Shown: piece by piece, positions 15,000 to 40,460 of the stretch
How positions within the stretch are numbered: the first letter of the stretch is position 1
Layout of the letters: every line of letters starts with the position of its first letter
From: Glycera tridactyla
Taxonomy: Eukaryota
Direction: 5' to 3'
NCBI GenBank assembly: GCA_965644265.1
Contig: OZ286465.1
Coordinates: forward strand, 93,186,001-93,250,000
DNA: 64,000 nt
The notes under the pieces: generated by a model
Databases searched by the model: none
The model's input: the letters and a program-made list of their open reading frames with translations, nothing else
Told to the model about the DNA's origin: nothing
Position numbers and translations under genes: made by a program

Positions 15000-17900
15000 A
15001 CTTTCTTCAATGCTAAGAGTGAATCGCATCAAGTGAGCTGGACTCAGGCAAGGATAAAGAGAACAAGGTGTGGAGTCCTGAACTGGCAAATCGGCCAAGT
15101 CAGCGTGGGGGCGTGCTACTGCCCGCTACACTAACATGACTGATAGTGAGGTGCAAGTGACAGTGTTCCAGCAGGTGTGACTATCATGACTGTATTGATA
15201 CAGTCTCAACCGGTGGATAGAGAATGTAACAATAGTGCAATGATATCAGTCATGCTGGGTTGACTCCTTGTCAGCATGCAAACTGGATGACAGTGTGGAT
15301 CCTCCGAGATACAGCAAGTCATAGCATGGCATCAAGTGAGACCATGTCTCAATCACATACAACCATGGAATAAATTGAACTTCATTAACTCAAGTCTAGC
15401 TGGTGCAGGCAATATCTAAATCCCTAGATCTGTAGAGCCTAGACAACAGCATCTAGGGCACAGTCCTTAAAACCCAGTCAATTTCTGTAGAGCTACAAGG
15501 CAAGAAGTTAACAATGTTGAAAGTGAGAATTATCAATGGTGATACTCTCAAATAGTAAGGAATTTTAATGCCAATTATCATAATACACATAAAGAGAAGT
15601 GCTCAATGTGTATTTGCAGGGAAAGACTTTCATTTGTGCCAAATTTCAGCATCTGGGAAATAGTGGAAAAGACTGGTGAACGAAAGCAATGAATCTCAGT
15701 AGCACAGCTCAATAAGCAGCCAACTAGAGGAGATTCTGTCACCTAGAAATCAATAGCAGTAAACATATATATTTCTGCCTGTCAGGTAAGACTATGAACA
15801 TCCTTCATAAAATGTTCAGGATATATTTTCCACACAGTCGCATTGTCATTGCATTGTCAATTCTATCAGACCGCAATAAGAAACCAACAGAAACAATGTA
15901 TGAATGAGTCACGCTTGTTGGTGTTGCATGTGTACATGCATATGTATGTGTGTGGAGGACTGCGTATCTATTCATTTTTTGAGAGCGGGAGCAATAAATA
16001 TTTCCATAGAAAGAAGATACATCAAACTTGCACCAAGCAATGTCTGAAAGTCAAAGTATCACAGAAATAAAGTTTATATAGATGTATTGTGTGAAGATTT
16101 GACTGGATGATTGCTCAACAAATACATACGATGAGCTGCTTTCTGAAGAATCCAGGTGGATGCAAAATTTGAACAGACCTATGCCCATGTATGTTCACTC
16201 CAATTCTCCTGCTGTGCACACTGATCTTGAAAGCAATCCAGGAACTGGAATAATCATTTCAAATGTTTGCTAAGCTCCTTGAGTAAGCTGAACTACGGAT
16301 TCAACATTAAATATTCCAATCACTTGAGTCACCGATACTTATTAAAAAAACAACCGTCATCAATAGCAATCATTACAGAATTCACTGAGTCAACAAGTAC
16401 CATAGGGTTGCTTAGTACTCAGAAATACAGATTTGACAGGAAACATTATAGTAATATGATGGGAGAACCCACCACTACATTCTGAAGAAGACAAATGGCT
16501 GTACAGATGTGACATACCCAAATGATCCCAAGAGATTGAGCTTGCAGTCCATGCACCAGTTGTGTGTAAAGCAATGAAGTCTATGTACACTGCTGCTGGG
16601 GTTACACGGGAGATTCAGTAAGTCGGCATTTTGTGCCGAACCCATCATCCAAAGCACCGACGTCAGTGCATTACCCATAATGCCCTGCCTGGCATGTGTG
16701 ACTGCCCCCTACGCCAGTACTCTACAAGGCTATTCTGTAGATATAAATTGGTCTGCTAAGAGCTAAACATGAATAGGTGAGAAATATCTACACTGGTGCA
16801 ATACTACTCGTATTGTTTATTTATAATATGTATATATATTTATACTGTATGTACTCTGTGGTGTGTAGCCAGGGCATTACTGACCAGGGTGTGGGGACCA
16901 GGGAGCCTTCAACTGCTGCATCACTACCAGAAAACACTCATCATATCGCCAACGATGAGTTTCAGGGGTATTCAAGCACAAACTCAGTAAACTATCAATA
17001 TTTGGCCTAAATACACATAATGTATTTGAAACTCAAATGACTCCACTGAATGCGGGTTTTGAGAAGATTCTAGCACAAAACTGGGAAATATGTCTTCACA
17101 CCAGATTATGTGGGATGATATAGGGATACAAGCTGAGTACATGATCCCCAAACCCTATATATTTTCAACAAATTATTGGGTGATGATATAAACTTTCAAC
17201 TGTATGAGCATATCTCACCAGATCTGAAGTGGCTGGCGATTGATTAGTAGTTTGGAGTTCTCAATAAAATTCTAACGTGCGTGCTAGGTAAGGAATTGAT
17301 GAATTTTCGAATGTAATGAAATCTGTATTTATCTGGTAGTGAAGCAGCAGGAGGAGTGGTCCAAGAGTCAAACGATGCACCCTAACTGTGCCCCAAGGAA
17401 GTATGCTGCTACCATGAAATTCAAAAATGGCTGCTTCCTTTTATATTGGTCAGCAATGCCCTCTATCATGAAAAAAGTGACATCTAGACAATGACTAGTT
17501 GAATGTGCCTCTTCACAACTGGATTGACACAATACAGATCTCTACACTGCAAGCCAGCTCTGGCGAGACTCAAATAAGGAGTCTAATCTCCTATACCACC
17601 AGCAACTGATTCTAGGAATTGTGACGATAATGAATACACAGAGTGTTGATATTTAGCATTGACTGCGGCAAAGTTTGGCATGATATTTCTCAATCTTGAT
17701 GCATCCAGCTACTAATGTGCTATAGTCATTAGCACTAACAAAGCCAACAATTTGGTAAAATATTTGGTCCATGACTACTTCCTCAGATTCGACTAGTTTT
17801 GCCTAAAGCTACACTCGTAAATCAATACTTACTCAAGAGACTATTCTTCCTTTTGGAGCTTTATCATAGAATTGTGGTAGTCTTGATGGAGCTCACAGAA

Positions 17901-20100
17901 TTGAGCAATCGCCCAGCAAGTACTTATGACCCTATGAAATTATCATTGATAACTCGTATTATTACAAATTACACGCAGGTCATGAGAGTTGAAATGTCGA
18001 TGTACGGATGAAGATGCGATGACAAATCGTCAACTGAAAGATGTCACTTTCTCCACGTCAACTGTTCCCCTTGACACAATTGCATGTAACCGTATATTAC
18101 AATAAAATGCAATATTTTTTTTTCTCATTAGCTTTTGTAAAATAAAGTTAATGAAATGACACATCTCATAGTCATCAAAACACAACCAATAGGAGTTGTG
18201 ATTTACACAAAGCCAGCTTGGCGTTATTTTTTGTTTACTAAAAAAAACCCACTGAAATTATAATCACCAATACACATCTACATCCAATTTCTCAAGCCAA
18301 AACGTACATTCTTAAACCTCAAATTCATTATTTATTTACTACAATATGCACTGGTGCTCCTTATAGAAAGTGCAGTGGCTGATGGTCACCAGTGAATGCA
18401 CTCCTTTTAAGGGACACCAATAGGACTCACAATTATACATAAGATCGTCGTAATCTGTGAGAGGTTTAACAACGTACATCCCAGCCTTTTTTTTACAATG
18501 TGAGAGAAGTAGAGTGGAAAAGTCTGTGATTCAGAAGAGAGACAAAAACAGCTGCCTATGCGGCCATTTTTCTAACAATAGCATCTGGCAAAGCAAATGA
18601 CTAGATTCGAGACACTGATGACAGAACATTCTATGTATGCGCAAAAAATCCATCGATGAAATCACCCCTTCATGCTCCAGAGCGATACTTCGCTATGCGA
18701 CCATTGAATCACCATGCGACTAGCATGAGTGAGATGTAGAGAGACAGAACTACCAGGGCTATACCTCGTCTCATACTTCAACTACAGTCCATACATTCAT
18801 TCAGATCATTCAAAGAACTTCCCTACCTACTGAAAGACATAAAACTGGAAGAATGAGCCAGATTCGTGAGACAACTTTCAAGAAAGTTTCAAGGAACACC
18901 CAACATGATCGTAATCCACACTTGTGAATCATCTTTGAACAGGAACCATTCATCTCCTGCTGAAGCACTCACAGGAAATGTAAGACCTATATTTCTGTTG
19001 ATTTTCTTGACATAATCAAACGTATCTACAGTGAAACCTGCAATGAGAAGCCACTTTCTATAGGAGACTGTTTCTCCATGACAGCTTTTCTATTTGACAT
19101 AGTCAAATGTAGACCGACTAGAGACCATCTCTTTTGAGATTGCGTTTTGGTGACATTTTGGGCGGTCTCTCCTCACACGTCTTACTGTAGTACATAACAG
19201 ACCGCACTGTAGTACTCCTCAACTGAAAGCCCACTTTGCAACAAATTCCTTTTCAGTGCTATTCGGTCTCTTATGGCAAAATTTCATTTCATACAATGGA
19301 ACCCGTGATGAGCAAGTTCGAGTCGAGCAAGCAATTCTATTGAAGAGCTCTATTCAATTATCCCTCGGCAAATATGCCTGCAATCAGCAAGCACCTGACT
19401 GAAGGGACCAACTTTTGAGAAATTTAGTCTGCTTTCTCATTGCATGCTCTATACATAAATCAGATCAAATTTCATTCAATTGCAATGAAAATTGACATCC
19501 ACACAGACTGACCATGTGTCAAATCAACTTGGTAACATCTCACATAGTCAAGATGCAAACATTCTGGCCTCTGAACCAGCATTCTTTCATTGCCTCAATG
19601 AAGCAATCCGACAAGCCCCTAGTTACAAATTCTCCAATTCATACAATAACGATGGAGGTGAGCATAAAATGGCCAAAAGACCTGTGAGACTACTTAATTG
19701 TATTACTGCGATTCTATTCAGTATATGCATTACACATATCTAAAAGACCAGAGTGGACTCAGGATGAGCAAAGCAGGTGTCCTCAAACTTGAGATAATAT
19801 TGCTCCAAAAAACATTCCCTAGATGAAAACATTGTAATTCTCACCAAACTAGGCTCATCCGTGACAATCCATTTGTGCACATTGAACAGACTGGCCCCAA
19901 TTAAAGATTTCCTAAACATTAACAATGAGCAATGTCCAACCCTAATGACATCTCAATAGCAATGACTTCGATCAATTCCTCATTCCATCATGGCTGGTGA
20001 TTCTATCAATCAATCAACCGACCAATCACTGATGAATGTAACTATCTATTAGATGCAATAACTTTCAAGCTATTACAGTGTGTCTATTTCTTCCTACCAG
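15000..20100 (+). pseudogene. Probable ancient LINE remnant(s)
   Basis: Coding-like composition with broken frames and weak RT-like remnants such as LGSSVT; no intact ORF. Confidence 0.2.
19029..19187. mobile_element. CAGTGAAACC-type MITE copy
   Basis: ta-CAGTGAAACCTGC...TTACTG-ta; internal TTTTGGTGACATTT...GGTCTC shared with the 3429 and 39599 copies. Confidence 0.75.
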
Positions 20101-21109
20101 ACACCCAGTGTTCTGTGAAGCAGCCACTTATTTCTGTGATTCTTAACTTTCTCAACTACCGAAGCAGCTCCGATAGAGACTGAAGACAGATACTGCCAAT
20201 TAATATAAGCACTAGGTTAAATGTTTTTTGTATAATAGAGCATGCAATCTTCAATTCAGTGGCACCAAACTTGCACCAAAAGTCATGGTCAGAGACTGGC
20301 AATCACTTCTGTCATATTTTTAACATCGGATGTCAAATACACATCATACCTCAGATAAGAGTCTACTCCTATATAATGCACCTTTCAACGATGAATACTT
20401 TTTACATCTTGAAAGGATATATCACCACTTTCATTCAACTGTAATAAGAAGCTTATAATATGTTTGAGTACTACCGTATATTGCACACCGCACTTGACAA
20501 TGCCTTTGCGCACTGTGTGTATATTCGGGAATATACGGTATGCAAAACTGATAAATTGGGTGCTCACATAAATTCTTAACATTGAGATGGTCATGAAATA
20601 TCGGATTAGCCCCCATTCATATCAAATTGACCTGATGGATGGAAGCTCTTACTCCCACCAATATGGCCCTTTCTCTTGTTAGGATTCATCCCATAATCTT
20701 GCATGGGTGTGACCCTCCATGATTGAATTACCACCAATTGTTTCAGGTATGAAAATTCAATATGCCTCCAATTCCATGTATATGCACTCACTAGGATAAA
20801 ATATGGATTGGACATGCAAAATTTCCCATCTTCATGATCACATATTAAGTTGATATCTCAGGTGAAAATTTCGTCAAAATGTGAGGACAGCTTCTGATCT
20901 GCAAGTTGGGTATTGGTATTCCGGTTCAGTATGTTCATTATAGGCAGTGACTAACACAATGAGACAGCTGATGACGAAGTAGGTTCTGTAACCTAAAGAC
21001 AGGGAAACAGCTGCTGAACTTTAGTCAATACAGGCAGAAACAATAGAAGACTGTGAAGACAACAACAACTATTTCAACAAAGGATGCACAAACGACGACA
21101 ACAGCGATG

Positions 21110-21170
21110 ACTGATGACTGACGATGGCGATGATGACGACGATGACGATGATGATGATGGTGATGGCGGA
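21110..21170. repeat. Imperfect (GAT/GAC)n trinucleotide repeat in the CADPS 3' UTR region
   Basis: GATGATGACGACGATGACGATGATGATGATGGTGATGG. Confidence 0.9.
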
Positions 21171-21306
21171 GTGATGTTTGGTGATTGGCTCTGATATTCA
21201 CAGTGTGTATTCTTGAATTTTTTTACAACAGTTTGTGTTATTTGAGATGACGAGGTGGAGTACGATGACGACGCAAATCGAATTGAGACATTTTTAGCAC
21301 CAGCCA

Positions 21307-21399
21307 TTATTCGGAGTCGTCTCCTCGCGCTCCCCCGTTACTCAGGAAACGCGTACTTGAGCCACTGCCCATTGTCACGGATTGGGTGGCTTCCTCCAC
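21307..21399 (-). CDS. CADPS: CADPS canonical terminal coding exon VEEATQSVTMGSGSSTRFLSNGGARGDDSE*
   Basis: Strong acceptor ttttcttttttttgtttccag. Begins VEEAT like CAPS VEEATASV, has an acidic end and a TAA stop at 21309-21307. Confidence 0.93.
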   Translation of the reverse strand: MEEATQSVTMGSGSSTRFLSNGGARGDDSE

Positions 21400-24300
21400 C
21401 TGGAAACAAAAAAAGAAAAAAATCATGACTGATACCACATTTTTCTTCTCAAATTATCGCATCCACCTGCATTCACCATAATTCTAGATAAAAATATCAC
21501 ACATATCAATCAGCATTCGATTGAAAGATGTAAACATGGCGATACTACCCAACACTTCTATCCCACTGCAATCATTTCATATCATCACAACAGTACAAAC
21601 TACAAACCATGATATCGACTGGTTTATTTAGATTTTTCTACCAGTACAATATTGAGGCACAGTAGAATTTATGCCAACCTCAAAATTGCTTGACAAAATA
21701 GGTCACTTCGAGCTCATATGAGGAGGAACATTTCAAAATCAACCAGTTTTGGACTGCAAAAGCAGGACACATTTTCGTACATTCTACACTGAGCCTAGGC
21801 ATTTTTTTTGTTTTCCAAATTATTATTTAGTCATCGTTCTCGAGGAAAATATCAGTCATGCACGCACACACTCACGCATCCATGCACGCACACACACACC
21901 TTTGATATCATTTTCAAAACTGGTACATTCTTCATCCAACAACCAGGAAAACTTATCTGAGGAAGATGAGTGAATCATACATGGAAAGATGTTCCTGAAA
22001 TTATCCCTTGGGACTAATACAGATACTCCCATCGAATGGATGAATGACAGAAAGATGCACTGTCAAGTTGAAATTTGGTGAAGACCGGAATAAATCACGA
22101 GGGATGGGTTCATACAAGTGTATATTATCTGAGGGCTGTCTAATCAAAAGTGAGCAAATGCTCCAGATGATCAAAGAGAAATTGAATAGGGTGATCACAA
22201 AAAAGGGTGGTAATCATGGTGTTTGGAGGGCGGGGGGTGAGGGAGTTTATGGCCAATTCGGAAAAACCAGTATTGTGTATGACTTGTTGCTTGCTCAGTG
22301 AGGTGAACCATGTGATAAATTATGTGTTTACAGACACTTTGATTCAATTACAGTGATCTCAGTTCTATTTTATCATTAAATTTATGGCCTACACTGATTG
22401 CAGTAGTGATCTTTACCTGCAAGAAAACCTGGAAGAAACAAGCCACTGTGATATTTCAGACCAATCAAAAGTGGATATACCTTCCAGCTAAAAGGCACAA
22501 TTGATTGACTTCTTCCAGAAGGTAAAGACAAAAATGAACGCCAAACTGGAATATAGTAATGACTCCCAGCTCCAAAATGGATACACGTAACTCAAGAACT
22601 CGTCGGGGAAAACATACTGAAGGACTTCACCTGCCCTCATTCGACCAACTGGAGACAAAATGGCAATGCACGCATCAGCAATGCACCATGCACCTTACAA
22701 AATGGCTGCAATCGATCAAAATGGAAATTTCCAAAATGCTGGAAATCAAGCAGCAACTTCTATCAAAATGGACAAAAATCTGGTAGTCATATTATGATAT
22801 ATGAGCTTAAAATCAAAGAACTAAAAATCAATAAGTAAACCATCAAAAATGGAATAGTAGTCCTATGTGTGAATGACCAAATTTGGCTAGAATCTTTGAG
22901 CATTTCCTGAATCACTTCTGCTTGCTGATTCAAATATAACTAAAATATAACTAAAGCATGACAGTCTGATGATGTTCAATTTCCATGCTTCAGGGTTCAT
23001 TAAATTGACTGTTTAATGCTCAACATCTCATCAACTATAAGAGGATTACATGAGACTGAAGGGATGGTATAATTCTCAAAAATATTGCCCTGATTATACT
23101 TGATCTATAAGAATAATATATATATATATATATATCTGAGGTACTCCATCGCTACCAAGTTATTTTGGTGATGGGCCATTAAAGGATGCCATCGAAGGAT
23201 TTGAATGGAAACTGAAATCAGGAATTGACTCAAAGTATATTCAGATGATTTAAACATCTGCCATTATGATCTTCTTATGTCATTCCATCCTTTTGTTGGC
23301 GGTAATTTGGGTTTGCATGGACAGAAAACTCAGTGAAGATGGGTGCTATGAAGAATAGTTTTGTTCATTGTATCAACTCAAGATGCTTTGTTATTGAGTG
23401 CAAATTATCACATGAATGCTCAGTCCCTGATTTATGTATAAGATTCCAGAGATGCACAAATAGAATTTAGATACAATCAGATACTTTGAAAACCAATGGT
23501 ATGCAAGCTACACACCATCAACTCGAAATTGAGGGAAGAGAATCAGTTTTATTTTGGTTAGCAAGTTTACCTTTTCCATTTTGGTTAGCAAGTTTACCTT
23601 TTCCAGAAGTAGTCTGATTTTCATGATCTAAAACCAAAATGCTCAGCATACAATGGCCTTTTTAATCATGCCGTCAGGTTTCATTCACCCTCAATGACAT
23701 GGAAATCCCAAGACTTGCAAAACACTCCTGACAAAATCACTGATGTATTCTACTCCCTAGATGAACACAAGCACCAACCAACAGATGGAGCCTTCAAAAA
23801 CTGTGATGATGCAAAATACATGGCCACTCAAAATGCGGAAATAAACTGTAATATGTGAAAATTGTGGATCATCATGATACAAAAAAGCCACTTCTAGTCA
23901 TGTCATAGAAAAGAAACAAATCTTCATATAGATATCCATCAGAATATTCACATTTCTCAAATCAATCACCAGCTGTCCTACATGAGCTGTGAGATTGAGG
24001 ATAACTAATTACATAATTAAATTTTTGGGACATAACAATTTATTGAGAAATGGCAATTGAGGAGTGGGAAAATCAGTGTATTGTAACTTTTTGACAAGAT
24101 CAATCTATTATGATGGAGACAAATGAGTAATGTATACCTAAAGGAAAAAGTTCTGAATCATATTCCATGACAGGGACACTTTTGGAAGGTTTCTATTCTA
24201 GTTGAAGATATCGATCGAATACTATTCGGAATTCAGGAGTATTCAAAATGGGAGGGAGAGGGGAAAAATGTACCTGTATTCAAAATTCGGGGATAAAGGG

Positions 24301-24835
24301 ATGATGGTAAATCTTGAATTAATCGGTAGAGGCTTGCCAAATAATTCAGATTGGGGGTGGTGTGTGGGTTGTCAAAATATTATGAACTCCATCCTGTCCC
24401 AATTGTTGAATGGTTGAGCCCTCAGGAAGAAGCCCACAGTTAGATCGAGTAAACATCGGTATACTGCATATTGGCATTGGGAAATGGAGGTGGGGCACAG
24501 CATTTCATAGCATGATGGAATTTGATTTTCAACTTCATTATAGATCTAACTTGTAGGTAATCTGTCATGGGCATGAACTTGTATGCCTTTATTGACCACA
24601 GGCGATGTGCTAAGCAAAATCCATAATATGCAGGTCCTACATATCTGAATATGAGTTTTAGGGGAGAATCAAAACCTCTGGGAATGGATAAAAATAAAAT
24701 TAGAATAAGACTATCGGTAAGTCAGTTGAGCTGCACACAAGATGCACTGACCAAAAGTTGGCAATGAAAAAGTATATGTCCATCATCAGCAGGGAACTTC
24801 TAAAAGGAAAAGAAAATTTGAAAAAAGAAAACATT

Positions 24836-24988
24836 TTACGGCACTAACGCGGCCTCAAATGGTATGGACTCATTGACAAGGAGTTTGGCGCTTGTATTCA
24901 AATCTTTTTTCAATTTCTCGGTGAGACCTTGTTCGCCAGCTGCTTTGGCCTGTTCTACCATGGCAAGGGCATGCTTTTCCTCTTCCAC
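24836..24988 (-). CDS. CADPS: Candidate alternative CADPS terminal exon VEEEKHALAMVEQAKAAGEQGLTEKLKKDLNTSAKLLVNESIPFEAALVP*
   Basis: Phase-0 acceptor (ttaac...tgtctgttgtttatcaccag); starts VEE like the canonical last exon; 50 open codons; AATAAA on the minus strand at 24593-24588. Confidence 0.6.
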   Translation of the reverse strand: MEEEKHALAMVEQAKAAGEQGLTEKLKKDLNTSAKLLVNESIPFEAALVP

Positions 24989-26525
24989 CTGGTGATAAAC
25001 AACAGACATGTATGTTAATATACCTACCCTGAGAAAGGTCAACCTAACAAAGGGCATCATCGTTCACTAAGGATGATTCTTGAAGGAATAAGCATGGGAA
25101 ATCTCCCATCTCTGGGTACACCCCACCCAAGTCTGTGAACATTCCTACCCATACACAGGAGAAGTCCATGCCTCCAAGAATACTGTTACTTTCAACATTC
25201 TTATTGCTTCTTTCATTCATATGAAGGCGGCCTTGAAGCAACTAAAAGGTATTGTGGCAGTCTTTCACATTTAAGAATCCATTATAGTATTTTCAACTCG
25301 CTCAATCTGTTTTCTTCCATAAGACCCAATGATTTAGAATACTGCACTTCCAGGTCTTTGCTGGCATAATCAGGTCTCTCATTGATGTTTTTTTCCAGAG
25401 TAACTGAAGGTGCCAAAGGTGACCAGAGGCCCCCAAAAGGCGTTGCAGCTGCCTTCCACACCTTTAGGTCCATCAAGGTGTAGTGAGATGAATATCTCTT
25501 TGGAGGAGCACCGTCAGCTATCAAAGAATGCACTTGGGTCCCACAAGTTTTACTTGAGTGCAACTGCTTGTAGTTATTGTCTTTCCTACAATGCTATCTA
25601 TTGATGTCGTTTTCAGGAATGACGCAGCTGATAAGCAATACTTCTTGACAGGTGATGTCCTGTAATGAACCCATCTTGTGAGCTTATCAAATAATTTACC
25701 GAGTCTGAATTTCAACCTGGGCCATCCAGCTGGATTGAATGGCCAGTCAGGAAAAATAAAAGAAACGCATCCTTGGATAAATATATTTTGGGGTGTATAT
25801 GCATGCGATGCCTACACCAAGAGGCCCGGACTTGTATACCAGTGAAAGTATTGTCAATTGTTGATGGTCACCACAGCCATGACATTGAAGTACATGTATG
25901 GTCATTTCAACCATGGGAGTGAGTAAAGGCCTGGGCTTAGGATACCAACATAGTATTTTAATACAAATAGGATTAAGCATTAATTCTCCGGACAATTTTC
26001 CACAGAGCAGCACCGCATACAAACTCATCACCTCCCCTTCACAATAATCCCAGTCCATCTTGACTACATGTAAATGGTGATCTCCACAAAATCCTATCTT
26101 ATCTAGCCATATACTGCATCATAATTATTTATGCTAATATGTTCCAAAAAATAGTTTTTTGGAAAGAACTGCCATACTTGCTAATCTCCACACCTATGAC
26201 TACTTCATTATGGAGATGAAGATTGCTAGGATAACTATAGTGGTGCATTTTTTCAGGTGTTGGGAGGGGTTGGATCTCTAATTGGTGTATCTAGACAATT
26301 CTATTCCATGGAAGCAGGATATAATTTCCTTCGGGTGTTCAAGCATTCTGGGAAATCCATCAAGAAGTCATATACCATGAAGATCCGAGGCAACCCATGT
26401 ATGTTGTCCTGGTTACGATCATTCATGCATCCTACAGGTGATGGCACTCCCACTACACTACCGGAAATGCCATGCAAGAGCTTCCTCCCAACATCGGACG
26501 TTATATTGACCTCAATTTGGATAAG

Positions 26526-26550
26526 ATCTCTCTCTCTCTCTCTCTCTCTC
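26526..26550. repeat. (CT)n microsatellite
   Basis: Direct reading of the sequence. Confidence 0.95.
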
Positions 26551-29500
26551 ACACTCTCATTCTTGAAATTGGCTGGTAGTGCTGGATTCAACTATACCAT
26601 GCAGTGAGTGCAAAGGCATTTCCTGATACTGAATCAGTCCAAAATTTATGCAAAATGTGTGGCAACCTATCTATCTCGATACATTTTTTTTTCTGAGGAA
26701 TACGAAAACTGTTCCAAAGTCTCTGATATCACCTATTTCTAACCAACAAGCAATCCATACACTGCCTAAGAATATTTCTACATGGGTCCATCCATAAATG
26801 TACAGGAAGGGGGTCTAATACTAGAAAAAATTCTTTGCAGCAAAATTTCATCCACATATCAACAGCATCAGAGTATATGTTTCAATCTAGTGCATGTCAG
26901 GTCTTGATCGAGAGAGTTGTCTGGTATCTCTGGCGTTGGCATTGGTTATCTCTGGCGTTGGCTTCAGATAATACAAAAACAAAGTAGAAACCATGGAGCC
27001 AACCCATACACCAGGTCGAACTATATGTATATGCATGTACATACAGTAGTACTGCTAGCGATCTCCACACTGTTGGCCGAGATCACTAAAATCTAGGTTC
27101 CTCTCCAACACTGAAGTGTATGACAGTTTATTGAAAAAAAAAACCATAGCAGGTAAGACACCCAATGAAACACTTCAATTTGAAAGAAAATGTACCTAGG
27201 CTTTAGTGAGAAGGTTCTTTGGTGATGGAGTCTAGGAAGATAGGAGTTATCTGTTGGCTCAATACCGACTATCATGAAAACATATCTCAAAAAAAATTCA
27301 CTAAAGTCTGTCCAATTCCACGCTGATGGGTATATTTCTCACTCTCATATCGCCAGTCTAAATCAGGGGACAGGAAACATGACTATGGAGAATTTCACCT
27401 GCATAATTTCTACAAACGTGTCAAATAATCAAGTTCACACCATTTTCCAGCATGAGTAGCAGTCATGCTGTCACTATTATATGCAAAAGATCAAAACAAT
27501 ATGAATTAACTAAAATCAGGTTTGATTCAATTCATGCCATTCAGACTCATATCTGACAAAAAAACGGCAATTTGAGCGTGAGAAAAATACCCATCACGTT
27601 GGGATTTAATGGACCTTAGGTTTCTACCTAATCTACCAGCTTGACCTAATTCACCAGCCGGACAGGGACAATCAGCCGGAACATAATTGTTGGCATATTA
27701 ACTATGGTTCCAGCCATCCTGATAAGAACACAAACTACCAGGATCAAGTATAGAGTAAATTCTTGCCTACTGTGACAGTACATTTATATTTTATGTAATG
27801 CACAATTTTCAAGAGGTATTTCGCAAATGAAGAGCAATAGTACACATTTGTACCTGGTAATTATTTTACTAATATGCAGTTAAATGACTCCTTTCCAATC
27901 AATATCTGACAAATTAAAAACAAAAAGATACCCTGGACCATTCATTGCGGAATTAGGTGTGAAAGACCAATACATCAGATTCCATTACAACATGATCATA
28001 TTGATGTCATGTTATATTTTTGTTATGATAGTCTCTCAAGAAAAAGTTGTAAAACACTGCAAATACCAATCAAACAAGCCGCAGAGAGGAAATACCCAAT
28101 CATAACATTAATATCATCACCCAAATGAGATACTTCACTCACTGGAGATAGCAATACTGTAGATAGTAAATGTGGTATATTAGCATAGATATCTGAAGCA
28201 AACAGCCTCAAAATCAATGTTAGTAGCAACCACTAGACTTGGGTTAATATCAAAACCGTGTCAACAGAGTCCCTTTGTTAAGTCAAGCAGGTAGCAGCTC
28301 AGAATACTCTACATTATTTGGATGATTTTTTGTTCTTTCACAAGGAAATGAGGAAAACAAGTGCCTGGACTGAAAATGTCAAACCTACCTAATAAAGCTG
28401 AAATGTCAAGTAATCAACACAATTGTAATTTTCACTCAGACAGAAAACCATATCACTGTGAATTCTGCTACATTCTTCAGTGGAATTTCTACATGAAAGC
28501 AAAATTCCCCTGTATCGACTTTTTTGAGAATTGATATATCTGGACCAACGAATCCAGTTTTATAACCAATGTGGGCATAAGTTCATTCCCCTGAGACATA
28601 TTGCAATGAGGATTACCTCCCTCATGCCTATAGACTAATGCCAGACCACTGGGCCATACATGTATGTCATTCAGCCTTGAATTTCTAATTTTTGAATGGA
28701 GCTAGAGAATATCCCTCCATTTCTAACCGCACAATGTAGAAATTCAGGTCAGTAGGGAAGAGGGTCCCAGTACAATAGCTATAGAGATAAATGACCATTT
28801 GCTGAAGAAAGAAAAATAATTCCTACATAAATATATGATTAAAATCTCTCTGATAGTGGTATTCAAATGCAATAGAAGAAGCATTTCTTCTCCCAGAGAG
28901 ACTGCACACATCTGTAATTTCAGAAACTTTTCATCGGGGAACTACCTGATAGGGCACTTGAACAGGAGTAATCTATGATATTCTCCAAAAAAAATGCCTC
29001 AAATTCACCATGAAATGGCCCACCTCATTTTCATGCATAAATTGCAGGGTGACAATCTCAATGACTATCACTCACACTGGAAATATAATACAACCCTACA
29101 GAATCATGATTCACAGAGAAGACATGAATGAAACCATTCAGAAAGTAGATCAGCCCCACATTGGAAATCCCACATCATGAGACTCTACATACACCAATGA
29201 TACAGTAGGATCCTTCCAAGAAGACAATCCAGCAACCAGATACAATACCAGCACATCTTGATACTCCAGTTTCTGAATGAAGCAACCCTAAGGAAATCAA
29301 TCATACTGGCTATCCTTTCATTTTAAATGACCCCGAGGGACTGGTGGTTCACTTATGCCATATCTATATGATGGACATTAAAAACTGAAATACTGATGGC
29401 CCCGCCTGACCACTGAATTCCATACCAATCAGGCAAGAGCTGATGTGGGCCATCATCAGATATGTTAGCAGGACCACAGAATGGCCATACTAAGTTTGTC

Positions 29501-30157
29501 CACTAACTCCGTTACTTATGTTTGCCCAATCACCATTCACATTTCATCCAATTCTGAAAGAGAACTTAGCCATAAAACATAAATGTACTGTTACATTTTG
29601 TTTCTAGCAGAGATCTATTCGAGAATTCCATCACAATCCCATCTCAAGCAAGAGGGATGCCCAGCACCAAGGCAGGGGTTTCTAATTAGTCTCTAGCTCT
29701 ATCTATGCTTGGGTTAGACTTATGTTAAGCCAGGAGAGTTCTGCAGGGTGAGAAGATTGTTAGAGATCCCACACCTCCCGACACCAGGCTTAGCAACGAT
29801 TACATCGTAGGAAGCTAGTTTCAATGACCAACCATCGGCTCGAGGTTCTTGGCAATCGCTTCATGCTAGAAAAAAATGACATGTGCACTCAAAATAAACA
29901 TTCTTTTCTGAGATTTATATCAAGCCACCTAGACAAAGTATAACATTACATTTGGGAGTAAAATATTGTGTGTCCCATCACACATCACGCATAATAATGA
30001 TGATATCTTCAGCCACATGGGTGATGACACTGCTAACATTTTAGGAGGAGTTTACATCTGCTTCGTACTCCCACACATGTCAGCTCAAGCTGGTACAATA
30101 TGCGATGGAAGTTGAGCCCACCCACCCACACGCATGCACACACACATGCATGCACCC

Positions 30158-30188
<31 letters not shown>

Positions 30189-30189
<1 letters not shown>

Positions 30190-31495
30190 AAACAAGGCAT
30201 AAATGCACAAATGGCACGCATGTGCGCCGCTAATTCATCCAAGCAGCTGAATCTAGCAAGCATAATCTTTTGCTCCAAGCATTCTCAAGTAATTGCAGTA
30301 ACAAGGTCATGACCTGGGAGATGGAGATCAAGGTCACTCACCATTTTATGGGCTTCTTTTGCTTTCAATTGTGCATATGTGGTGTAAATCTGGTGAATGT
30401 TGCTCCAAGTGTTCTCATGTCATTGGAGTAACAAAGTATCTTCAATGTCAAGGTCATGACCTTGAAGGTGAAGGATGAGGTCAACCACATTTGATGGGAT
30501 TATCCCCATTCATTGGTACATATCTGGCAGAAATTTGATGGATGTAGCTTGAAGTTTTCAAAGTCAAGGTCATGACCTGAAAGATGAAGGTCAAGGTCAC
30601 TGACATTTGATAGGCTTCTTTTGCTTTCACTGGTGCATATATGGTGTAAATCTGGTGAATGTAGCTCCAAGCGTTCTCATGTTATTGGAGTAACAAATTA
30701 TTTTGAATGTCAAGGTCATGACCTTGAAGGTGAAAGTCGAGGTCAACCACATCCGATGGGATTGTCCCCCATTCATTGGTACATATCTGGCAGAAATTTG
30801 ATGGATGTAGCTTGAAGTTTTCAAAGTCAAGGTCATGACCTTGAAAATGAAGGTCAAGGTCACAGGCATCTGATAGGCTCCTTCCGCCCTTGCCATTGCC
30901 CCTCTCACTGTCCTAGCCCCCCCCCCCCCTCCAACCCAGGTGCAATCAATCCTGCTACAACTGCCACCGCCCCCCCCCCCCCACCCCATCCTGTGCCACT
31001 CGCTGCTGCCCCACCCCCTGCCCTTCCCACCACAGTTTAATCAAGAGATCAGACAGCTCTGCTGATATGTGAAAGACTCCACTTGGTGCAAAGACAGTTA
31101 TATAACCGAGGACGAAATGCGACAAGGCTCCATTCAGAGGACCGGCAGTGTCATTACATAACAGCCTCGGTAATAGACATCATATGGTCCACTCTTTCCT
31201 ATTCTGCTGGTAAAAAGTTGCTTTAAAATTCAGGATTCCAGCCTGAATAACTCATCTTCCATGAAAGTCATTGGAACAATATTGATACCCAGTATTCTGC
31301 CGCTCATGATCTTTATGATTGCGAAATTTCAGAAATATTGCTTGATCAGTTACAGAGTAGTAGCTCAAAGAAAAACTTTAACCAAAAACTTTAACCAGGA
31401 AGTTTACGCCACACGGCCAAACGGCCGGACGGCCGGACAGACGGAATCTGCGCCATTACATAGACACGCATTTTGCTCCGCATGCGTGCCAAAAA
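30189..31495 (+). mobile_element. Helentron-associated (HINE-like) non-autonomous element with an internal tandem array
   Basis: Subterminal inverted repeats GGCACGCATG (30213-30222) and CATGCGTGCC (31481-31490); 3' hairpin CACGCAT/ATGCGTG followed by an A-run; ACGG-type microsatellite near 31411-31445; about 263-bp CAAGGTCA-rich tandem units at 30300-30875. Confidence 0.7.
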
Positions 31496-32753
31496 CAGCT
31501 GTGGTCTTAATTGCCATTGTTTCTTGAAGAGTCCATGGCCACAGTGGCACGAACTGCTGCTCTGCTACATGATTCAGTATTGCCATAGCTAGTTTTCTGG
31601 CTGCAACGCTTTTAGCCAGCTTTTAGATATGGAGTTAGATCTCAATTTGGTTTGACTGTTCTTAAATTGTCCAAATGCTTATCTTTTTTTTTTTTTTTCC
31701 TTATGTGATGCATTTACATGATACACTTGTCTGCAATGTGAACCTGGAGTGATAATCAAGACGACTGAAAACAATTGTTAATAATGGGCCTCTCAAACTT
31801 GAGTCAATAGACAATGAATGATGCACATCACTTGTAGGCTAAATCCATCACCATGGAAACAAGTCTGTCATAAGTTCTGATGATAGAACACTATATTGTC
31901 AGATCCAAATGTGGCAGGTATGTTTCACACGATAAATTCACCTTTTCTCATCTGATCCGAATTTCAATGACACAAATGGATTGTGTAGGTCTTCCGGCCA
32001 TCATCAAACCTGGTTTTGGGTAGTCTGTATACTTTTGAAGAGGATACACTCATATTTCATTGTATTTTTACAGCAAATCTGCTGATAATGCCGGATGTAG
32101 AGCAATGAAGATATGGCCAACATACTCACTGTGGAACTGAAATGAAATCAACCTATTTGGTGCGCTAGGGTGAAATATACTAGAAAACTTTGCTGCGATT
32201 ACATTTCTAGTCACTGGTGTCTGGAAAATGTGGAGTGGCAATGAAATCTGCCTCAACAGGCCAAAAAGGCCAAGACACTTTGAATAGTCAGGAATTCCCT
32301 AACATATCTATTTCATCATCAGTAGTTATGACAGACAGGTTTCCTCAGCTATGCTGAAAATATCAAACATCCTGCATGGCACAAGGTCATAAAGCGAGGT
32401 ATTTTTGGCACCACTCTCATCCTCATCCTCTAAGCACTAAGTAGCACCCTGATCCCGAGGTCTTCCAGCTGGCTGCTCTAACACATACCCCTTCCCATCT
32501 ACACTCCTCATCAAATATAAAGCTATGATGCTCTACTCAATGACTTTTCATGGTAATACATGTCTACGTAACTGAGAAATGAAACTTATCAATCTGGACT
32601 AAGGAGCACTGTGAATCTTGTATGAAGGTAAACACTTGCAAATGATACCAATTCATTATGAACTCTATTCATATTTCTTATCACAGCAGAGTACTGGATA
32701 AATTAGTTAGCTGCAGTTGGATTATCAAATATGGAGAAAAAGTGAAATATTTT

Positions 32754-34092
32754 ATAAGGAAGAAGTTTCACGGTACTCACAGTGATTTTTGATGAAAGTC
32801 GAAGCTTTCAGAACCCATCCGGATTCTCTCCTCAGCGAGTCACTACTGAGCTGGCTTGGTGGTGGTGTCACGTGACCTGTAGATCGTAGCGAGGTCACGT
32901 GACTGGAGAAGCTCCCGATATATAGGCGGGAGAGTGTGCCGGCCCCGATCCCTGTTGAGTGGGGGGTCTGTTCTGGAGATGTACACTGCTTCGGCCACCC
33001 CTCTTCTGAACCAATCGGGTTCCTGATAGAGGATGGCAATGTTAGAGTCAGAAAATTGGTGCCCTAGTTGGGACATATGGTTGCCAACGGGTGAGGTGGT
33101 TCGGTGGTGTTCGGCAATTCTTCTCTTTAACGCCCTTTCCGTCTCACCCACATATGTGTCATCACAGTCATTACATTTGATGTGGTAAACTAGGCCCGCC
33201 TTGTCCCCTTTCATGACCTTGTCCTTGGGATGCACTAGTTTACTGCGTATGGTGTTGGTGGGTTTTATATGCACCGTAATCCCTGATTTACGCAGTATCC
33301 TAGCGATCGCATCAGTGGAGTGACCCACATAGGGCAGGGTCACACTGCCCTTAGGTTTGTCGGAGGCTGGGTCTCTATCGACTGAGGGTGGTTTAGGTCT
33401 GATGGCAGTCTCCCAGGCATGCTTGGAGTAACCTGAGATTGAGAGGACTTTCTGTAGATGTTGAATTTCGGCCAGTCTTATTTCATCACTGGAGCAAATG
33501 ACCTTCGCCCTGTGGTGGAGCGTGCGGATCACACCGAGTTTGTGTTGCAGAGGCTGGTTGCTTGAGTATTGCAAATACTGGTCGGTGTGGGTGCTTTTTC
33601 GATATACCGAGAACGATAAGTGACCAGTAGTGTCCTTATGGATGGTGGTGTCCAGCATGGCAATATGTCCCTCCTTCTCCTCTTCACTGGTAAATTTAAT
33701 CGCTGGATGGATTGAGTTGATATGAGCAGCAAAGTCGCTGAGTAAAGAGTCACTGAGGATGACCATGGTGTCATCAACGTATCTTCTCCAGAGGCGGATC
33801 TCATATGTGAAGGTGTTAAGCGCTGACTCCTCGAACCATTCCATGAACAAGTTTGCAACTATGGGACTGACAGGGGATCCCATAGCCGCACCTTCAACCT
33901 GTGAATATATTGTCCCGTCGAAGATGAAATATGTAGTCTTCAGGCAGATGGCTAAGAGTTCAACTACCTGTTTAGCTGACATTCTAGAGCGCTGTGATAA
34001 AGTGGCGTCCTGTGACAGACGATCGAGGATGATATCGAGACTTTGATCCACAGGAACACAGGTGAAGAGGGCTGTGACATCATAAGATATCA
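32754..34092 (-). mobile_element. Penelope-like retroelement (Penelope/Poseidon type), 5'-truncated
   Basis: Contains an uninterrupted RT + GIY-YIG reading frame. Flanked by the 11-bp direct repeat TGAAATATTTT (32743-32753 and 34093-34103). GC- and CpG-rich relative to the flanks. Confidence 0.95.
32790..32845 (-). ncRNA. Minimal type-I hammerhead ribozyme motif in the PLE 3' pseudo-LTR
   Basis: CUGAGGA core (32835-32829); stem II AGAAUCC/GGGUUCU with GGAU loop; GAAA (32809-32806); palindromic AGCU helix III; short helix I UCG/CGA. It lies right after the ORF stop, where PLE hammerheads are known to occur. Confidence 0.7.
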
Positions 34093-34093
34093 T
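32843..34093 (-). CDS. PLE polyprotein fragment: reverse transcriptase (from SYDVTALFT) plus GIY-YIG endonuclease, 416 aa
   Basis: RT motifs SYDVTALFT, GAAMGSPVSPIVANLFME, WRRYVDD and HPAIKFT; endonuclease GLVYHIKCNDCDDTYVGET..LKRRIAEH with the Cys/His pattern. The start ATG is created at the insertion junction. Confidence 0.95.
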   Translation of the reverse strand: MISYDVTALFTCVPVDQSLDIILDRLSQDATLSQRSRMSAKQVVELLAICLKTTYFIFDGTIYSQVEGAAMGSPVSPIVANLFMEWFEESALNTFTYEIRLWRRYVDDTMVILSDSLLSDFAAHINSIHPAIKFTSEEEKEGHIAMLDTTIHKDTTGHLSFSVYRKSTHTDQYLQYSSNQPLQHKLGVIRTLHHRAKVICSSDEIRLAEIQHLQKVLSISGYSKHAWETAIRPKPPSVDRDPASDKPKGSVTLPYVGHSTDAIARILRKSGITVHIKPTNTIRSKLVHPKDKVMKGDKAGLVYHIKCNDCDDTYVGETERALKRRIAEHHRTTSPVGNHMSQLGHQFSDSNIAILYQEPDWFRRGVAEAVYISRTDPPLNRDRGRHTLPPIYRELLQSRDLATIYRSRDTTTKPAQ

Positions 34094-34532
34094 GAAATAT
34101 TTTGAGTTGAATTGGCGATATTTCTATATGAACTGCTGATATTTGTGTGAATAATATAATTAAATGTCTGTTCCACACAATAAATTGGTACTCGACAAAA
34201 GACTCATCGTATCTCAGTAAATGATCAGTATGTACTCTTGGTGGACTTAAGTGAGCTACTCTGGTATTTGAGTCGAGATGCAGACGTCCAACATAATTCA
34301 AATTGGGCATTTGTGATCTGGCTCTCTAGTCTGCCAAAAAAAATTTCAAAGTTGAGAAAGTGTCTCATTCATTGCTGTTGCCTGTAAGGACTTTATCTAA
34401 TATATGCTGCAATAACTGGATGAACAAAGGTAATCTTATTGTGTCATGGAATGCGTGACATATGGATAGAAGTGTTACCATGAAAAGCTTCGTGACCTGC
34501 CCCCATGATATCTGAATAGAAGCAGACTACCT

Positions 34533-34787
34533 TCAGCAACATCCTCCAGACCAACTAAAATTAGCGTGAGGATGCTGTTCCTTGGGAGCCATCCCAATGG
34601 GTCGATGCAAATCTATGGTACTTTCCGTATCAGATATCTCACTCACGTCACTGGGACAACTCTTTGTTTCTCCCCAGATTCTGCCCATGAGAGATCTAGT
34701 CTCAACCTCCTCCTCCTCCTCCTCATCCTCATCTGTCTCTGTGTCAGATTCAGTCTCAGCAAGACTGAATCCTTCAGGTGCCTCATT
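34533..34787 (-). CDS. CADPS: Candidate alternative CADPS exon, acidic (NEAPEGFSLAETESDTETDEDEEEEEE...SWSGGCC*); terminal (84 aa) or cassette (47 aa, to 34647)
   Basis: Acceptor ggcaccag 670 nt after the penultimate exon, phase 0; open for 84 codons; internal in-frame donor GAC|gtgagt at 34647/34646. Confidence 0.5.
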   Translation of the reverse strand, partial: NEAPEGFSLAETESDTETDEDEEEEEEVETRSLMGRIWGETKSCPSDVSEISDTESTIDLHRPIGMAPKEQHPHANFSWSGGCC

Positions 34788-35456
34788 CTGGTGCCAACAT
34801 ATAAGAATAATTGATATCATACCCACCAGAAGAAAAGCGAGACAGAATAATGTAGGCCAATCAGATGGTGCCCTACATGATGTCCTCTGACTGATACAAG
34901 AATACTGTGCAATATATTCACAGATATTGCTGATGGTATGTGTTATTAGAAATATAATGTTTCACAATTGGTTCTCCTTGGTTTTCATCACATCTTCCAC
35001 TATATGACCAACTCATTCTTACAGTGCCACAAAGAAAATGTGGCTACAGAATAGGACCAAATCCATTGAAATTCGACCAACTTATGAATGGGACCTGACC
35101 TAAGACCATGTATACTTCTCTTATTTCCATTTTGCATCATTTCCATGAGACAGTATTAACAAATCTGGAAACTGTAGTGGTTCACACTGGTAGTTTCAAA
35201 CACAGGCCCAGGAGAATAATAGGTTGTAAAAAACAAGGACAATTCCCCCTAAAACAAGGAGTTTCTTCTGTTCTCAATTAACTGCTTTAAGACTGAATTC
35301 ACAACTTTCCTGTGAGAATATCCCTCCTTCACCCAAAATTCATTAGGCATGTAATCATATCGATTCAGAGAACTGAAATTTACAACATCAGCAGTTTCCT
35401 CACAATCCAGCAAATATACAACATGTAAAGGTCATTTCATTAGCAGTTGCCCTTAC

Positions 35457-35543
35457 CTGAAGTCGGCTGCATATTGTTTGGTACGTCTTGCTGTTCAGAT
35501 CATTTTCAGGAACTCCTTGTAACTCAAAGTCGGAATAACATTT
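35457..35543 (-). CDS. CADPS: CADPS penultimate exon KCYSDFELQGVPENDLNSKTYQTICSRLQ
   Basis: Matches CAPS [28 protein letters not shown]. Acceptor atttcag, donor CAG|gtaagg; 87 nt, phase 0. Confidence 0.96.
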
Positions 35544-35945
35544 CTGAAATAAGAATATTTCAGTGCTTAGCAGAGAAGTTCAATTAGGAGGGGTAATTCC
35601 TGGATATTTATAATGAAATGCCCTGATATCTTACCAAAATTTTACCTGACACCTCATGAAATCCCTTGACGGTTTCCCTTATTTTTGCCCTGTCTGGGAT
35701 CTCCCTGCCTTTCCTTGATGGGTGGACAACCTGACAGATTTTGATGCCGATGTGGAAGCAAAGATCTGTGATTACTGAATACAAGAAACAATAGCTTTGA
35801 AATGGGTACTGACAATAAATGATCGCCAGTAATAACAAAATGTTGAGCTATATCAGAGGAGAATGGATCATAGCCTACTTAATCACAACGACAGATTTTT
35901 CATGATATCATACTGGATTACTCAATAATAGTGAGGACTACTTAC

Positions 35946-36050
35946 GCGTGCCATGTTCATGAGACACGTGAGCTGATAGGGGTGTAGTGAGGCATCAAGT
36001 CTGTCCGTCAACCAATCACAGATCATCTTCAACTGGGCACTGTACCATGT
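35946..36050 (-). CDS. CADPS: CADPS exon TWYSAQLKMICDWLTDRLDASLHPYQLTCLMNMAR
   Basis: Matches CAPS WY...IC.WLTDR.D..LH.YQL. Acceptor ttgcag, donor CGC|gtaagt; 105 nt, phase 0. Confidence 0.96.
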
Positions 36051-36581
36051 CTGCAATTAAACAAAAATTGGGGAATGTCAAGTTTTTTGTTCTCCCTTTC
36101 AATTTCTTTTGTTCTTGCTTGAACAAACCTATGCCTAAAAACCAACCATACTAGAAACAAGAGAGACCATATGTTAACGCACATACAATAATATACAGTA
36201 AATAATTATACAGGGTCATGAAGAGTTACATGAGGTTGACATGTTTACGACAGACCAATGAGATTGTGAAATAAATAGTATATATACCAAAAAATATGCT
36301 GTCAAGTGACTAATATCAAGCGTTATAGGTATGTCGATGGATGTCTACTGAGTCTTCAAGTTCTTTCCTTTTCAGTGTATGTCAGATAATCATTATGTCT
36401 TTCCCATATTATTGATTATCTCAGAATGCATATATAGTCCAAATTAAATAGAAAACACTGTTTATTCAAATTATAAATGATATACTCCTCGGTGAAATGA
36501 GCCTCATCAAAGTACTTTAGTGAATGACAAAAGAATATGCATCTTCCTCCTCTAGAACTCTAGCATATACTACATACTCAC

Positions 36582-39598: not shown

Positions 39599-39727
39599 CA
39601 GTGAAACCTGCGACGAGGCGGTATTCTTATTTGACATAGACAAATATACCTCAGACGGGAGCCCCCTTTTTTCAAGAGACCACTTTTTGGTGACATTTAG
39701 GGCAGTTTCTCGTCGCAGGTCTCACAG
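39599..39727. mobile_element. CAGTGAAACC-type MITE copy
   Basis: ta-CAGTGAAACCTGCG...CGCAGGTCTCACAG-ta. Confidence 0.75.
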
Positions 39728-40385
39728 TACCGTGAAGGAGAGACCACCTTTTTCAGAAGACCACTTTTAAGTGAAGTTTCAGGTGGTATCTTCTCACACC
39801 ATATAACAGCCGACCAACTCTTACATCTCTTTCTCTTGCTATTGACCTCATGGTTACAGCAGTGAAACCGATCAGAAGTAAACAATATGAATTCACTGTA
39901 TTGCATTGTGTTCAATATAACAGCATTGGATCGCCGAATTAAGTTCAGCATGAGATCAGGACCGTCTTCCACTGACTTAAGTGCGGCTGTATCGAGCACA
40001 CAGCCCAGACGAGCAGTTTCAAATTGGAAGTAAAGGGCACATCCTATTTCTTCCATGCAATATGCTGATTCACCTCTGGTTTCCAATGACATATAAACTG
40101 ATCAACTAGTTATTTGTGGCAATCAATTTCATAATTCATTCGAAACCCTGGCATCAAATTAGCTGGGTACATTACCTGCCAGTCGACTAAATATATCATG
40201 ATTAACAAATCTATCCTCCTAACTGGGCAAAAATAGCATTGCTGACATGAATATATCTAACATTCATGTATGCAGTTACGGTATCAAATTTGAATGATCT
40301 GCCTGAATGGATGCCACCAACACCTGAGAATACATCAACACATTTAACAGGCATACACTAATAGATATAATCAGATTATACCTAC

Positions 40386-40460
40386 CTTTTCAATGAGTGA
40401 TGTCATCATTTGCTTCTGTACTTTCTCTAAGAACTCATCACTTTTCGTATGGTACTGGTG
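40386..40460 (-). CDS. CADPS: CADPS exon HQYHTKSDEFLEKVQKQMMTSLIEK
   Basis: Matches CAPS HQYHSKIDELIEE. Acceptor ttttccag, donor AAG|gtagg; 75 nt, phase 0. Confidence 0.95.

What the first reader, a model, noticed from the sequence alone, without database searches (positions are those of the whole stretch)
21307..34787. CAPS gene appears to have a switchable C-terminus: three phase-0 candidate last exons in one 14-kb intron
Seen: after the penultimate exon (ends 35457, phase 0), three YAG acceptors each open an in-frame ORF to a stop. They are 34787 (84 aa, acidic, ends GGCC), 24988 (50 aa, VEEEK...) and 21399 (30 aa, canonical VEEAT...). Known: the CAPS C-terminal region is implicated in dense-core-vesicle association. 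Inference: alternative last-exon choice could give isoforms with different vesicle or membrane targeting. I do not recall this arrangement from vertebrate CADPS.
Basis: partly seen in the sequence, partly recalled or inferred. Interest (0 to 1): 0.75.

Follow-up and report, generated by a model that had tools for sequence, protein, structure and literature searches.

The report
CAPS gene with alternative last exons
An invertebrate gene for the vesicle-priming protein CAPS ends its message in at least two, probably three, different last exons, giving different short protein tails.

Summary
The three open reading frames exist exactly where stated, on the minus strand and in phase with the donor at 35457. 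That alone is not above chance: 105 YAG sites in this intron open in-frame ORFs of 30 aa or more.

- **21399 (VEEAT tail):** real. One RNA contig joins 35457 to it, and the tail is conserved across lophotrochozoan CAPS proteins.
- **24988 (VEEEK tail):** very likely real. A related species keeps the exon, its acceptor and its stop, while the intron upstream cannot be aligned (dN/dS 0.12 at dS 0.50). Its splice junction was not observed.
- **34787 (acidic ORF):** unsupported. No RNA contig covers it, no relative was found, no AATAAA or ATTAAA follows it, and it lies next to a Penelope-like retroelement.
a fourth exon. RNA contigs from two runs, one per organism label, join 35457 to it. It reads HEAIAKNLEP, then stops after 14 codons.

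The idea of a switchable C-terminus is therefore supported, but with the set 29865 / 24988 / 21399. Any effect on vesicle targeting is untested. Two more distant relatives have a last intron of only 0.85-1.4 kb with no extra exons, so the arrangement looks lineage-specific. This is an ordinary alternative-last-exon mechanism in a gene where a tail swap has not been described. The scan has not found it before on other DNA.

The parts
35946..36052 (-). Antepenultimate CAPS coding exon (107 nt)
   Evidence: Spliced joint 35543<->35946 (GT..AG on the minus strand) in the contigs of all four runs. Matches CAPS proteins by tblastn.
35457..35543 (-). Penultimate coding exon (29 aa, KCYSDFELQG..SRLQ), ending in phase 0. 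It carries the shared donor for all the alternative last exons.
   Evidence: 93% identical to the Biomphalaria CAPS fragment (P0155), 90% to the Magallana and Octopus fragments and 86% to the Ridgeia fragment.
34536..34787 (-). The alternative 47-codon cassette reading is 34647-34787, with GTGAGT at 34641-34646. Unsupported.
   Evidence: The ORF is confirmed. No RNA contig covers it in four runs, and three runs' contigs splice straight past it. No protein relative found. No AATAAA or ATTAAA within 735 nt. No homologue in loci L002-L005.
32846..34123 (-). 5'-truncated Penelope-like retroelement ORF (reverse transcriptase plus GIY-YIG) inside the intron
   Evidence: 426-aa ORF. Pfam RVT_1 and GIY-YIG hits in the expected order, both just under the curated cut-offs.
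29559..29865 (-). Acceptor ..tttttttctag, coding part 29824-29865 (HEAIAKNLEPMVGH), stop TGA at 29821-29823.
   Evidence: The loose ends of X2 and X6 at donor 35457 equal window 29836-29865 exactly. Their contigs run 283 and 307 nt past the junction. The region is not repeated in the window.
24836..25011 (-). VEEEK exon: conserved acceptor region 24989-25011, 50 codons at 24839-24988, stop TAA at 24836-24838
   Evidence: Related-species contig L001: exon 87% nt identity with no indel and the same stop; 23 nt before the acceptor 87%; upstream intron 38-47%. NG86 dN 0.062, dS 0.505, ratio 0.12.
24588..24593 (-). AATAAA 245 nt after the VEEEK stop, a possible poly(A) signal for that exon
   Evidence: A pattern match only; use not shown.
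21307..21399 (-). Canonical last coding exon (VEEAT.., 30 aa plus stop TAA)
   Evidence: The X1 contig joins 35457 to it. The tail is conserved in Ridgeia, Biomphalaria, Magallana and Octopus fragments and in unnamed transcripts, and in loci L002 and L003.
16234..21306 (-). Long 3' UTR of the canonical isoform. Its extent is inferred.
   Evidence: The X1 contig runs 5166 nt past the 35457 junction. AATAAA at 18336 and 16821. The runs hold 26-41% of the words of 18500-25100, about the UTR's share of that stretch.

Best explanation
This is the 3' end of a lophotrochozoan (probably annelid) CAPS/CADPS gene on the minus strand. Its last intron has grown to 14 kb and now holds extra terminal coding exons. 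The single donor at 35457 is spliced either to the distal, ancestral exon at 21399 (tail VEEAT.., 30 aa, long 3' UTR) or to a proximal exon at 29865 (tail HEAIAKNLEP.., stop after 14 codons). Both of those junctions are shown by RNA. A third exon at 24988 (tail VEEEK.., 50 aa, poor in Ser/Gly/Thr so probably helical) is inferred from conservation to be used the same way. Choice among them would follow the usual alternative-last-exon logic: splicing to a proximal exon, coupled to cleavage and polyadenylation there, competes with splicing to the distal exon. This step is inferred. The outcome is CAPS proteins that share everything up to ..SRLQ, including the body of the vesicle-binding C-terminal domain, and differ only in the extreme tail. 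The acidic ORF at 34787 is most likely not an exon.
For: - **Gene identity:** Pfam MUN hits on three exons. tblastn to CAPS proteins. Named CAPS fragments match at 86-93% in the penultimate exon.
- **The runs are RNA:** the spliced joint 35543<->35946 appears in all four.
- **Junction 35457->21399:** the X1 loose end is the reverse complement of the start of the VEEAT exon (compared).
- **Junction 35457->29865:** the X2 and X6 loose ends match 29836-29865 with 0 mismatches, a unique place in the window directly after a pyrimidine-rich TAG acceptor.
- **VEEEK exon:** one related-species contig shows identity rising from 38-47% in the intron to 87% at the acceptor and across the exon, with no indel, the same stop, and dN/dS 0.12 at dS 0.50. 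By my own estimate, only about 0.03 of the 436 YAG sites would be expected to open with the canonical VEE by chance.
- **Lineage specificity:** L002 and L003 have last introns of 0.85 and 1.4 kb, and none of the extra exons within 10 kb.
Against: - No RNA junction to 24988 was seen.
- Only the first 30 letters after the 29865 junction were shown. The last four residues, the stop and the 3' end of that exon are read from the genome.
- No canonical poly(A) signal was found in the 560 nt of sequence read downstream of the 29865 acceptor (29300-29865).
- Conservation of the 29865 exon could not be tested.
- Contigs cannot give isoform levels or show absence.
- All runs come from two studies, and both organism labels are near-identical to the window.
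Confidence: 0.72

Rival explanations
1. The 29865 exon is an unproductive or cryptic exon, a poison or noise exon born in the expanded intron. Its transcripts would make no functional CAPS isoform.
For: The tail is only 14 aa. No conservation data exist for it. The intron is young and full of repeats and a retroelement. More distant relatives lack it. No canonical poly(A) signal in the 560 nt read downstream of its acceptor.
Against: It is the assembled path after the penultimate exon in two of four runs, one under each organism label. Minor variants tend to be dropped from contigs. The contigs continue 283-307 nt past the junction, longer than expected for a short cassette that rejoins the canonical exon.
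Confidence: 0.15
2. The conserved block at 24988 is the last coding exon of a separate gene nested in the CAPS intron, not a CAPS exon.
For: No junction from 35457 to 24988 was observed. Conservation shows only that the frame is functional.
Against: It opens in the phase set by the CAPS donor, directly after a conserved acceptor. It starts with VEE, like the canonical tail exon, which is conserved across phyla. No ORF elsewhere in the intron has a protein-family match except the retroelement.
Confidence: 0.1
3. The acidic ORF at 34787 is a real exon used in tissues or stages not sampled, either as a 47-aa cassette (donor GTGAGT at 34646) or as an 84-aa terminal exon.
For: The consensus donor GTGAGT is in phase after 47 codons. 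A related transcript, P0162, carries a 13-aa acidic insert at exactly this exon boundary, so acidic cassettes do occur in this intron position.
Against: No contig covers it in four RNA runs, and in three of them the contigs splice past it. No protein relative. No similarity to the P0162 insert. No poly(A) signal within 735 nt. 18 YAG sites give ORFs of this length by chance. Its acidic run is a (GAG)n-like repeat. From general knowledge, a CC end on a protein without a Rab fold is not expected to be prenylated.
Confidence: 0.1

Closest known systems
Mouse CAPS2/CADPS2 splice variants CAPS2d, 2e and 2f (PMC1853102)
   Same: Same gene family. The isoforms end in an additional unique 3' exon, so the C-terminus depends on which last exon is used.
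   Different: The mouse short forms break off after exons 4, 11 or 13 and lose the whole MHD and DCV-binding tail. Here every isoform keeps the full protein up to ..SRLQ, and only the last 14-50 residues are exchanged.
Generic alternative last exons coupled to alternative polyadenylation (for example the two last exons of Cdc42 that give different C-terminal lipid-modification motifs; recalled from general knowledge, not tested here)
   Same: One upstream donor and several mutually exclusive terminal coding exons, each with its own stop. A short C-terminal tail is swapped.
   Different: No lipidation or targeting motif is demonstrated in any of the supported tails here. Regulation and poly(A) sites were not observed.
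Canonical CAPS C-terminal tail exon of other animals (VEEAT/LEETN/TEEAT..)
   Same: The 21399 exon is its orthologue. The VEEATQSVT..FLSNG..DDS[DE] pattern is shared with Ridgeia, Biomphalaria, Magallana and Octopus fragments.
   Different: In relatives L002 and L003 it follows the penultimate exon after only 0.85-1.4 kb, with no competing exons detected in between.
Acidic 13-aa insert between ..SRLQ and VEEAT in a related lophotrochozoan transcript (P0162, JGI)
   Same: An extra coding piece at the same exon boundary, showing that this intron hosts optional exons in other species too.
   Different: It is an in-frame cassette that keeps the canonical tail. It has no sequence similarity to any exon in this window.

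Membership tests
[quoted passage not shown] | MUN/MHD1 domain | tested here: met
   PF06292 hits, E 2e-13 to 2e-19, on exons at 48686-49036, 42679-42918 and 41773-41943.
[quoted passage not shown] | C-terminal region collinear with named CAPS proteins, up to and including the tail exon | tested here: met
   tblastn of CAPS proteins maps exons in order from 48928 to 35457. Alignment A3. Named CAPS fragments of Biomphalaria, Magallana, Octopus and Ridgeia match the penultimate and VEEAT exons.
[quoted passage not shown] | C2 and PH domains upstream of the MUN domain | not tested
   The 5' part of the gene lies at or beyond the upper end of the window and was not examined.
Alternative-last-exon (ALE) gene architecture | One donor joined in RNA to two or more different terminal coding exons | tested here: met
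   35457->21399 (X1) and 35457->29865 (X2, X6) in RNA contigs.
Alternative-last-exon (ALE) gene architecture | Each alternative exon has its own stop codon and its own cleavage/poly(A) site | tested here: inconclusive
   All have in-frame stops. AATAAA lies 245 nt after the VEEEK stop and about 3.0 and 4.5 kb after the VEEAT stop. None was seen in the 560 nt read downstream of the 29865 acceptor. No 3' ends were observed, because contigs cannot show them.
Alternative-last-exon (ALE) gene architecture | Alternative exons maintained by selection | tested here: inconclusive
   Met for 24988 (dN/dS 0.12) and 21399. Not testable for 29865, and no relative was found for 34787.
   The ORF carrying GGCC has no RNA or conservation support. 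CAPS is not a Rab. That prenylation depends on the escort protein is general knowledge, not tested here.

The most novel reading that the evidence does not exclude
In this annelid-like lineage the CAPS tail has become a regulated three-way switch: HEAIAK, VEEEK or VEEAT. The Ser/Gly-poor VEEEK tail and the truncated HEAIAK tail would change how the adjacent vesicle-binding domain engages dense-core or synaptic vesicles, giving cell-type-specific priming factors from one gene. X1 and X2 are two samples of one study whose contigs follow different paths, which is compatible with sample-dependent choice but does not show it.
Probability: 0.15. Interest if true: 0.5.

Novelty: new member of a known kind. 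Interest (0 to 1): 0.3.

Why it matters
In mammals the C-terminal 135 residues of CAPS are the part tied to dense-core-vesicle association (PMC5589909, PMC1853102). No natural isoforms that vary only the extreme tail turned up in my limited literature search. A lineage that swaps this tail naturally would offer ready-made variants for asking what the tail does. It also shows how an expanded intron, 14 kb here against about 1 kb in relatives, can give rise to new terminal coding exons, one of which is already under purifying selection. For annotation, the gene needs at least one more last exon (29865) than sequence reading suggested, and one fewer (34787). Beyond that, the mechanism is commonplace.

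Tried and rejected
- **Acidic ORF:** the word search with the 142-aa frame, region 59-142, gave nothing. It sees only proteins of 78-248 aa.
- **VEEEK exon:** the word search gave a single relative. JGI metagenome scans for VEEEK peptides and for a degenerate HEAIAK pattern found nothing.
- **First alignment, A2:** the short exons were misplaced, so it was discarded. A3 was used instead.
- **Relatives L004 and L005:** they align only over the penultimate exon, and their flanks are too short and too divergent to test the acidic ORF. The P0263 contig could not be fetched because the file was too large.
- **VEEEK as a cassette:** I considered a CC|GTAAAA donor overlapping its stop. It is a poor donor (C at positions -1 and -2, A at +5) in both species, so the conserved TAA is more simply a stop. 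This reading is not excluded.
- **Acidic ORF as part of the Penelope-like element:** no RT similarity and no frame continuity between 34124 and 34535. I treat them as separate.
- **Self-BLAST of the exon regions:** no repeats in the window.
- **Rfam at gathering score:** nothing in 20000-36500.
- a bacterial promoter/terminator scan, which was irrelevant.
Full report
**Observation**

The CAPS gene lies on the minus strand.
- The penultimate coding exon (35543-35457) ends ..SRLQ in phase 0, before gtaagg.
- This pattern is not above chance. Of the 436 YAG sites between 35456 and 21300, 105 open phase-0 ORFs of at least 30 aa, 48 of at least 50 aa and 18 of at least 84 aa.
- Each candidate therefore needed independent evidence.

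**Gene identity**

- Three upstream exons hit the Pfam MUN domain.
- CAPS proteins retrieved with the AFAW exon map collinearly onto exons from 48928 to 35457.
- A profile search with alignment A3 returned named CAPS fragments. In the penultimate exon they are 93% identical (Biomphalaria), 90% (Magallana and Octopus) and 86% (Ridgeia).
- The host is therefore a lophotrochozoan. Another agent of this scan guessed annelid for this genome (s1-347582), and our tail is closest to that of Ridgeia.

**RNA evidence**

- The look-up of sequencing runs listed runs that hold 25-41% of the words of 18500-25100. That is roughly the share of the stretch that the 3' UTR would occupy.
- The one read-laying run allowed was placed on 34300-36100 with runs X1 and X2 (organism A) and X5 and X6 (organism B).
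- All four runs show the spliced joint 35543<->35946, so these are transcript contigs.
- At the 35457 donor, the X1 contig continues with letters whose reverse complement is the start of the VEEAT exon. It runs 5166 nt further, which indicates a long 3' UTR.
They match window 29836-29865 exactly and uniquely.
- That site follows a pyrimidine-rich ..tttttttctag acceptor. In phase 0 it reads HEAIAKNLEP (shown by RNA), then MVGH and TGA (read from the genome).
- These contigs run 283 and 307 nt past the junction. That is longer than expected for a short cassette rejoining the canonical exon, so I read it as a terminal exon. Its 3' end was not seen.
- No contig covers 34536-34787 in any run, and the contigs of three runs splice straight past it. 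Contigs show presence, not absence.

**The VEEEK exon**

- A word search found one relative, a 59-aa ORF on a 783-nt ENA metagenome contig (L001). This is genomic DNA of a related animal.
- In the alignment, identity is 38-47% in the upstream intron, which is effectively unalignable.
- Identity jumps to 87% in the 23 nt before the acceptor and 87% over the 150-nt exon, with no indel and the same TAA stop. It is 66% in the next 100 nt.
- Ten codon differences are synonymous and six are not. NG86 gives dN 0.062, dS 0.505, ratio 0.12.
- The frame is therefore under purifying selection. It opens in the phase set by the CAPS donor.
- It also begins VEE, like the canonical tail. By my own estimate, about 0.03 such starts would be expected by chance among the YAG sites of the intron.
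- An AATAAA lies 245 nt downstream.
- I conclude it is very likely a third alternative last exon. Its junction with 35457 was not observed.

**The acidic ORF**

- It has no RNA support and no protein relative (length filter 78-248 aa).
- No AATAAA or ATTAAA lies within 735 nt, and no homologue appears in any fetched locus.
- Its acidic run is a (GAG)n-like repeat.
- It lies 410 nt upstream of a 5'-truncated Penelope-like element (reverse transcriptase plus GIY-YIG).
- In its favour, there is an in-phase GTGAGT after 47 codons. Also, a related transcript (P0162) carries an unrelated 13-aa acidic insert at the same exon boundary.
- I put it at about 10% real.

**Comparative context**

- In two more distant relatives the VEEAT exon follows the penultimate exon after only about 0.85 kb (L002) and 1.4 kb (L003).
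- Neither shows a homologue of the extra exons within 10 kb.
- The 14-kb intron, with its retroelement, its tandem repeat and its extra terminal exons, is therefore a lineage-specific expansion.
- One of the new exons is old enough to be shared with the L001 species at dS 0.5.

**Mechanism**

- Shown: one donor and two alternative partners in RNA. A third exon is under selection.
- Inferred: mutually exclusive use as alternative last exons, with proximal splicing and polyadenylation competing against the distal canonical exon.
- All products share everything up to ..SRLQ.
- The canonical tail is rich in Ser, Gly and Thr (47%) and ends in acidic residues.
- The VEEEK tail has only 12% Ser/Gly/Thr and its composition suggests a helix. 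The HEAIAK tail is a 14-residue stub.
- In mouse CAPS-1 the DCV domain spans residues 1220-1355 (PMC5589909), and the C-tail mediates DCV association (PMC1853102).
- Only the extreme end of that region is swapped here. Any consequence for targeting is speculation.

**Known and new**

- Mouse CAPS2 has short isoforms with unique 3' exons, but these delete the MHD and the tail.
- I found no paper on a tail swap by alternative last exons in CAPS. The library is limited.
- The mechanism itself is commonplace, so this is a new member of a known kind, of modest interest.

**Limits and omissions**

- I did not touch the N runs at 3750-3879 and 52717-52866.

Noticed in passing
window 32846-34123 (-): A 5'-truncated Penelope-like retroelement ORF (426 aa; RVT_1 then GIY-YIG, both just below Pfam's cut-offs) sits in the sense orientation inside the CAPS last intron. 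Rfam at gathering score finds no hammerhead or any other family in 20000-36500, so the hammerhead noted at 32790-32845 (s1-349790) is not confirmed at that threshold.
   Followed up: partly
window 30302-30883: A 262-bp tandem repeat, 2.2 copies at 90% match, lies about 440 nt upstream of the 29865 exon.
   Followed up: no
P0162 (JGI transcript-derived protein), C-terminus: A related lophotrochozoan CAPS carries a 13-aa acidic insert (EHGDWPESGSDSE) exactly between ..SRLQ and VEEAT. This is an optional micro-cassette in the same intron position. It has no homologue in this window.
   Followed up: partly
L002:10259-11109 and L003:386-1761: The last CAPS intron is only about 0.85 and 1.4 kb in two more distant relatives, against 14 kb here.
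   Followed up: yes
window 16234-21306 (-): The canonical isoform seems to carry a 3' UTR of at least 5 kb, since the X1 contig runs 5166 nt past the last junction. A (GAT)n repeat at 21106-21165 lies just after the stop.
   Followed up: partly
P0018 (152 aa, transcript-derived, another species): This fragment joins the AFAW exon directly to the ..HDFAKHLEQRLKLM.. part. It skips the two exons in between, which suggests alternative splicing inside the MUN domain in a relative.
   Followed up: no
window 35211-35361: X1 holds a low-depth 151-nt contig with 3 differing letters inside the intron. It is probably pre-mRNA or contaminating DNA, with polymorphism relative to the window.
   Followed up: no
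window 37609-41068 (-): The CAPS exon or exons that should encode the ..YHSKIDE..-type segment, between the exons at about 41069 and 37608, were not located by tblastn.
   Followed up: no
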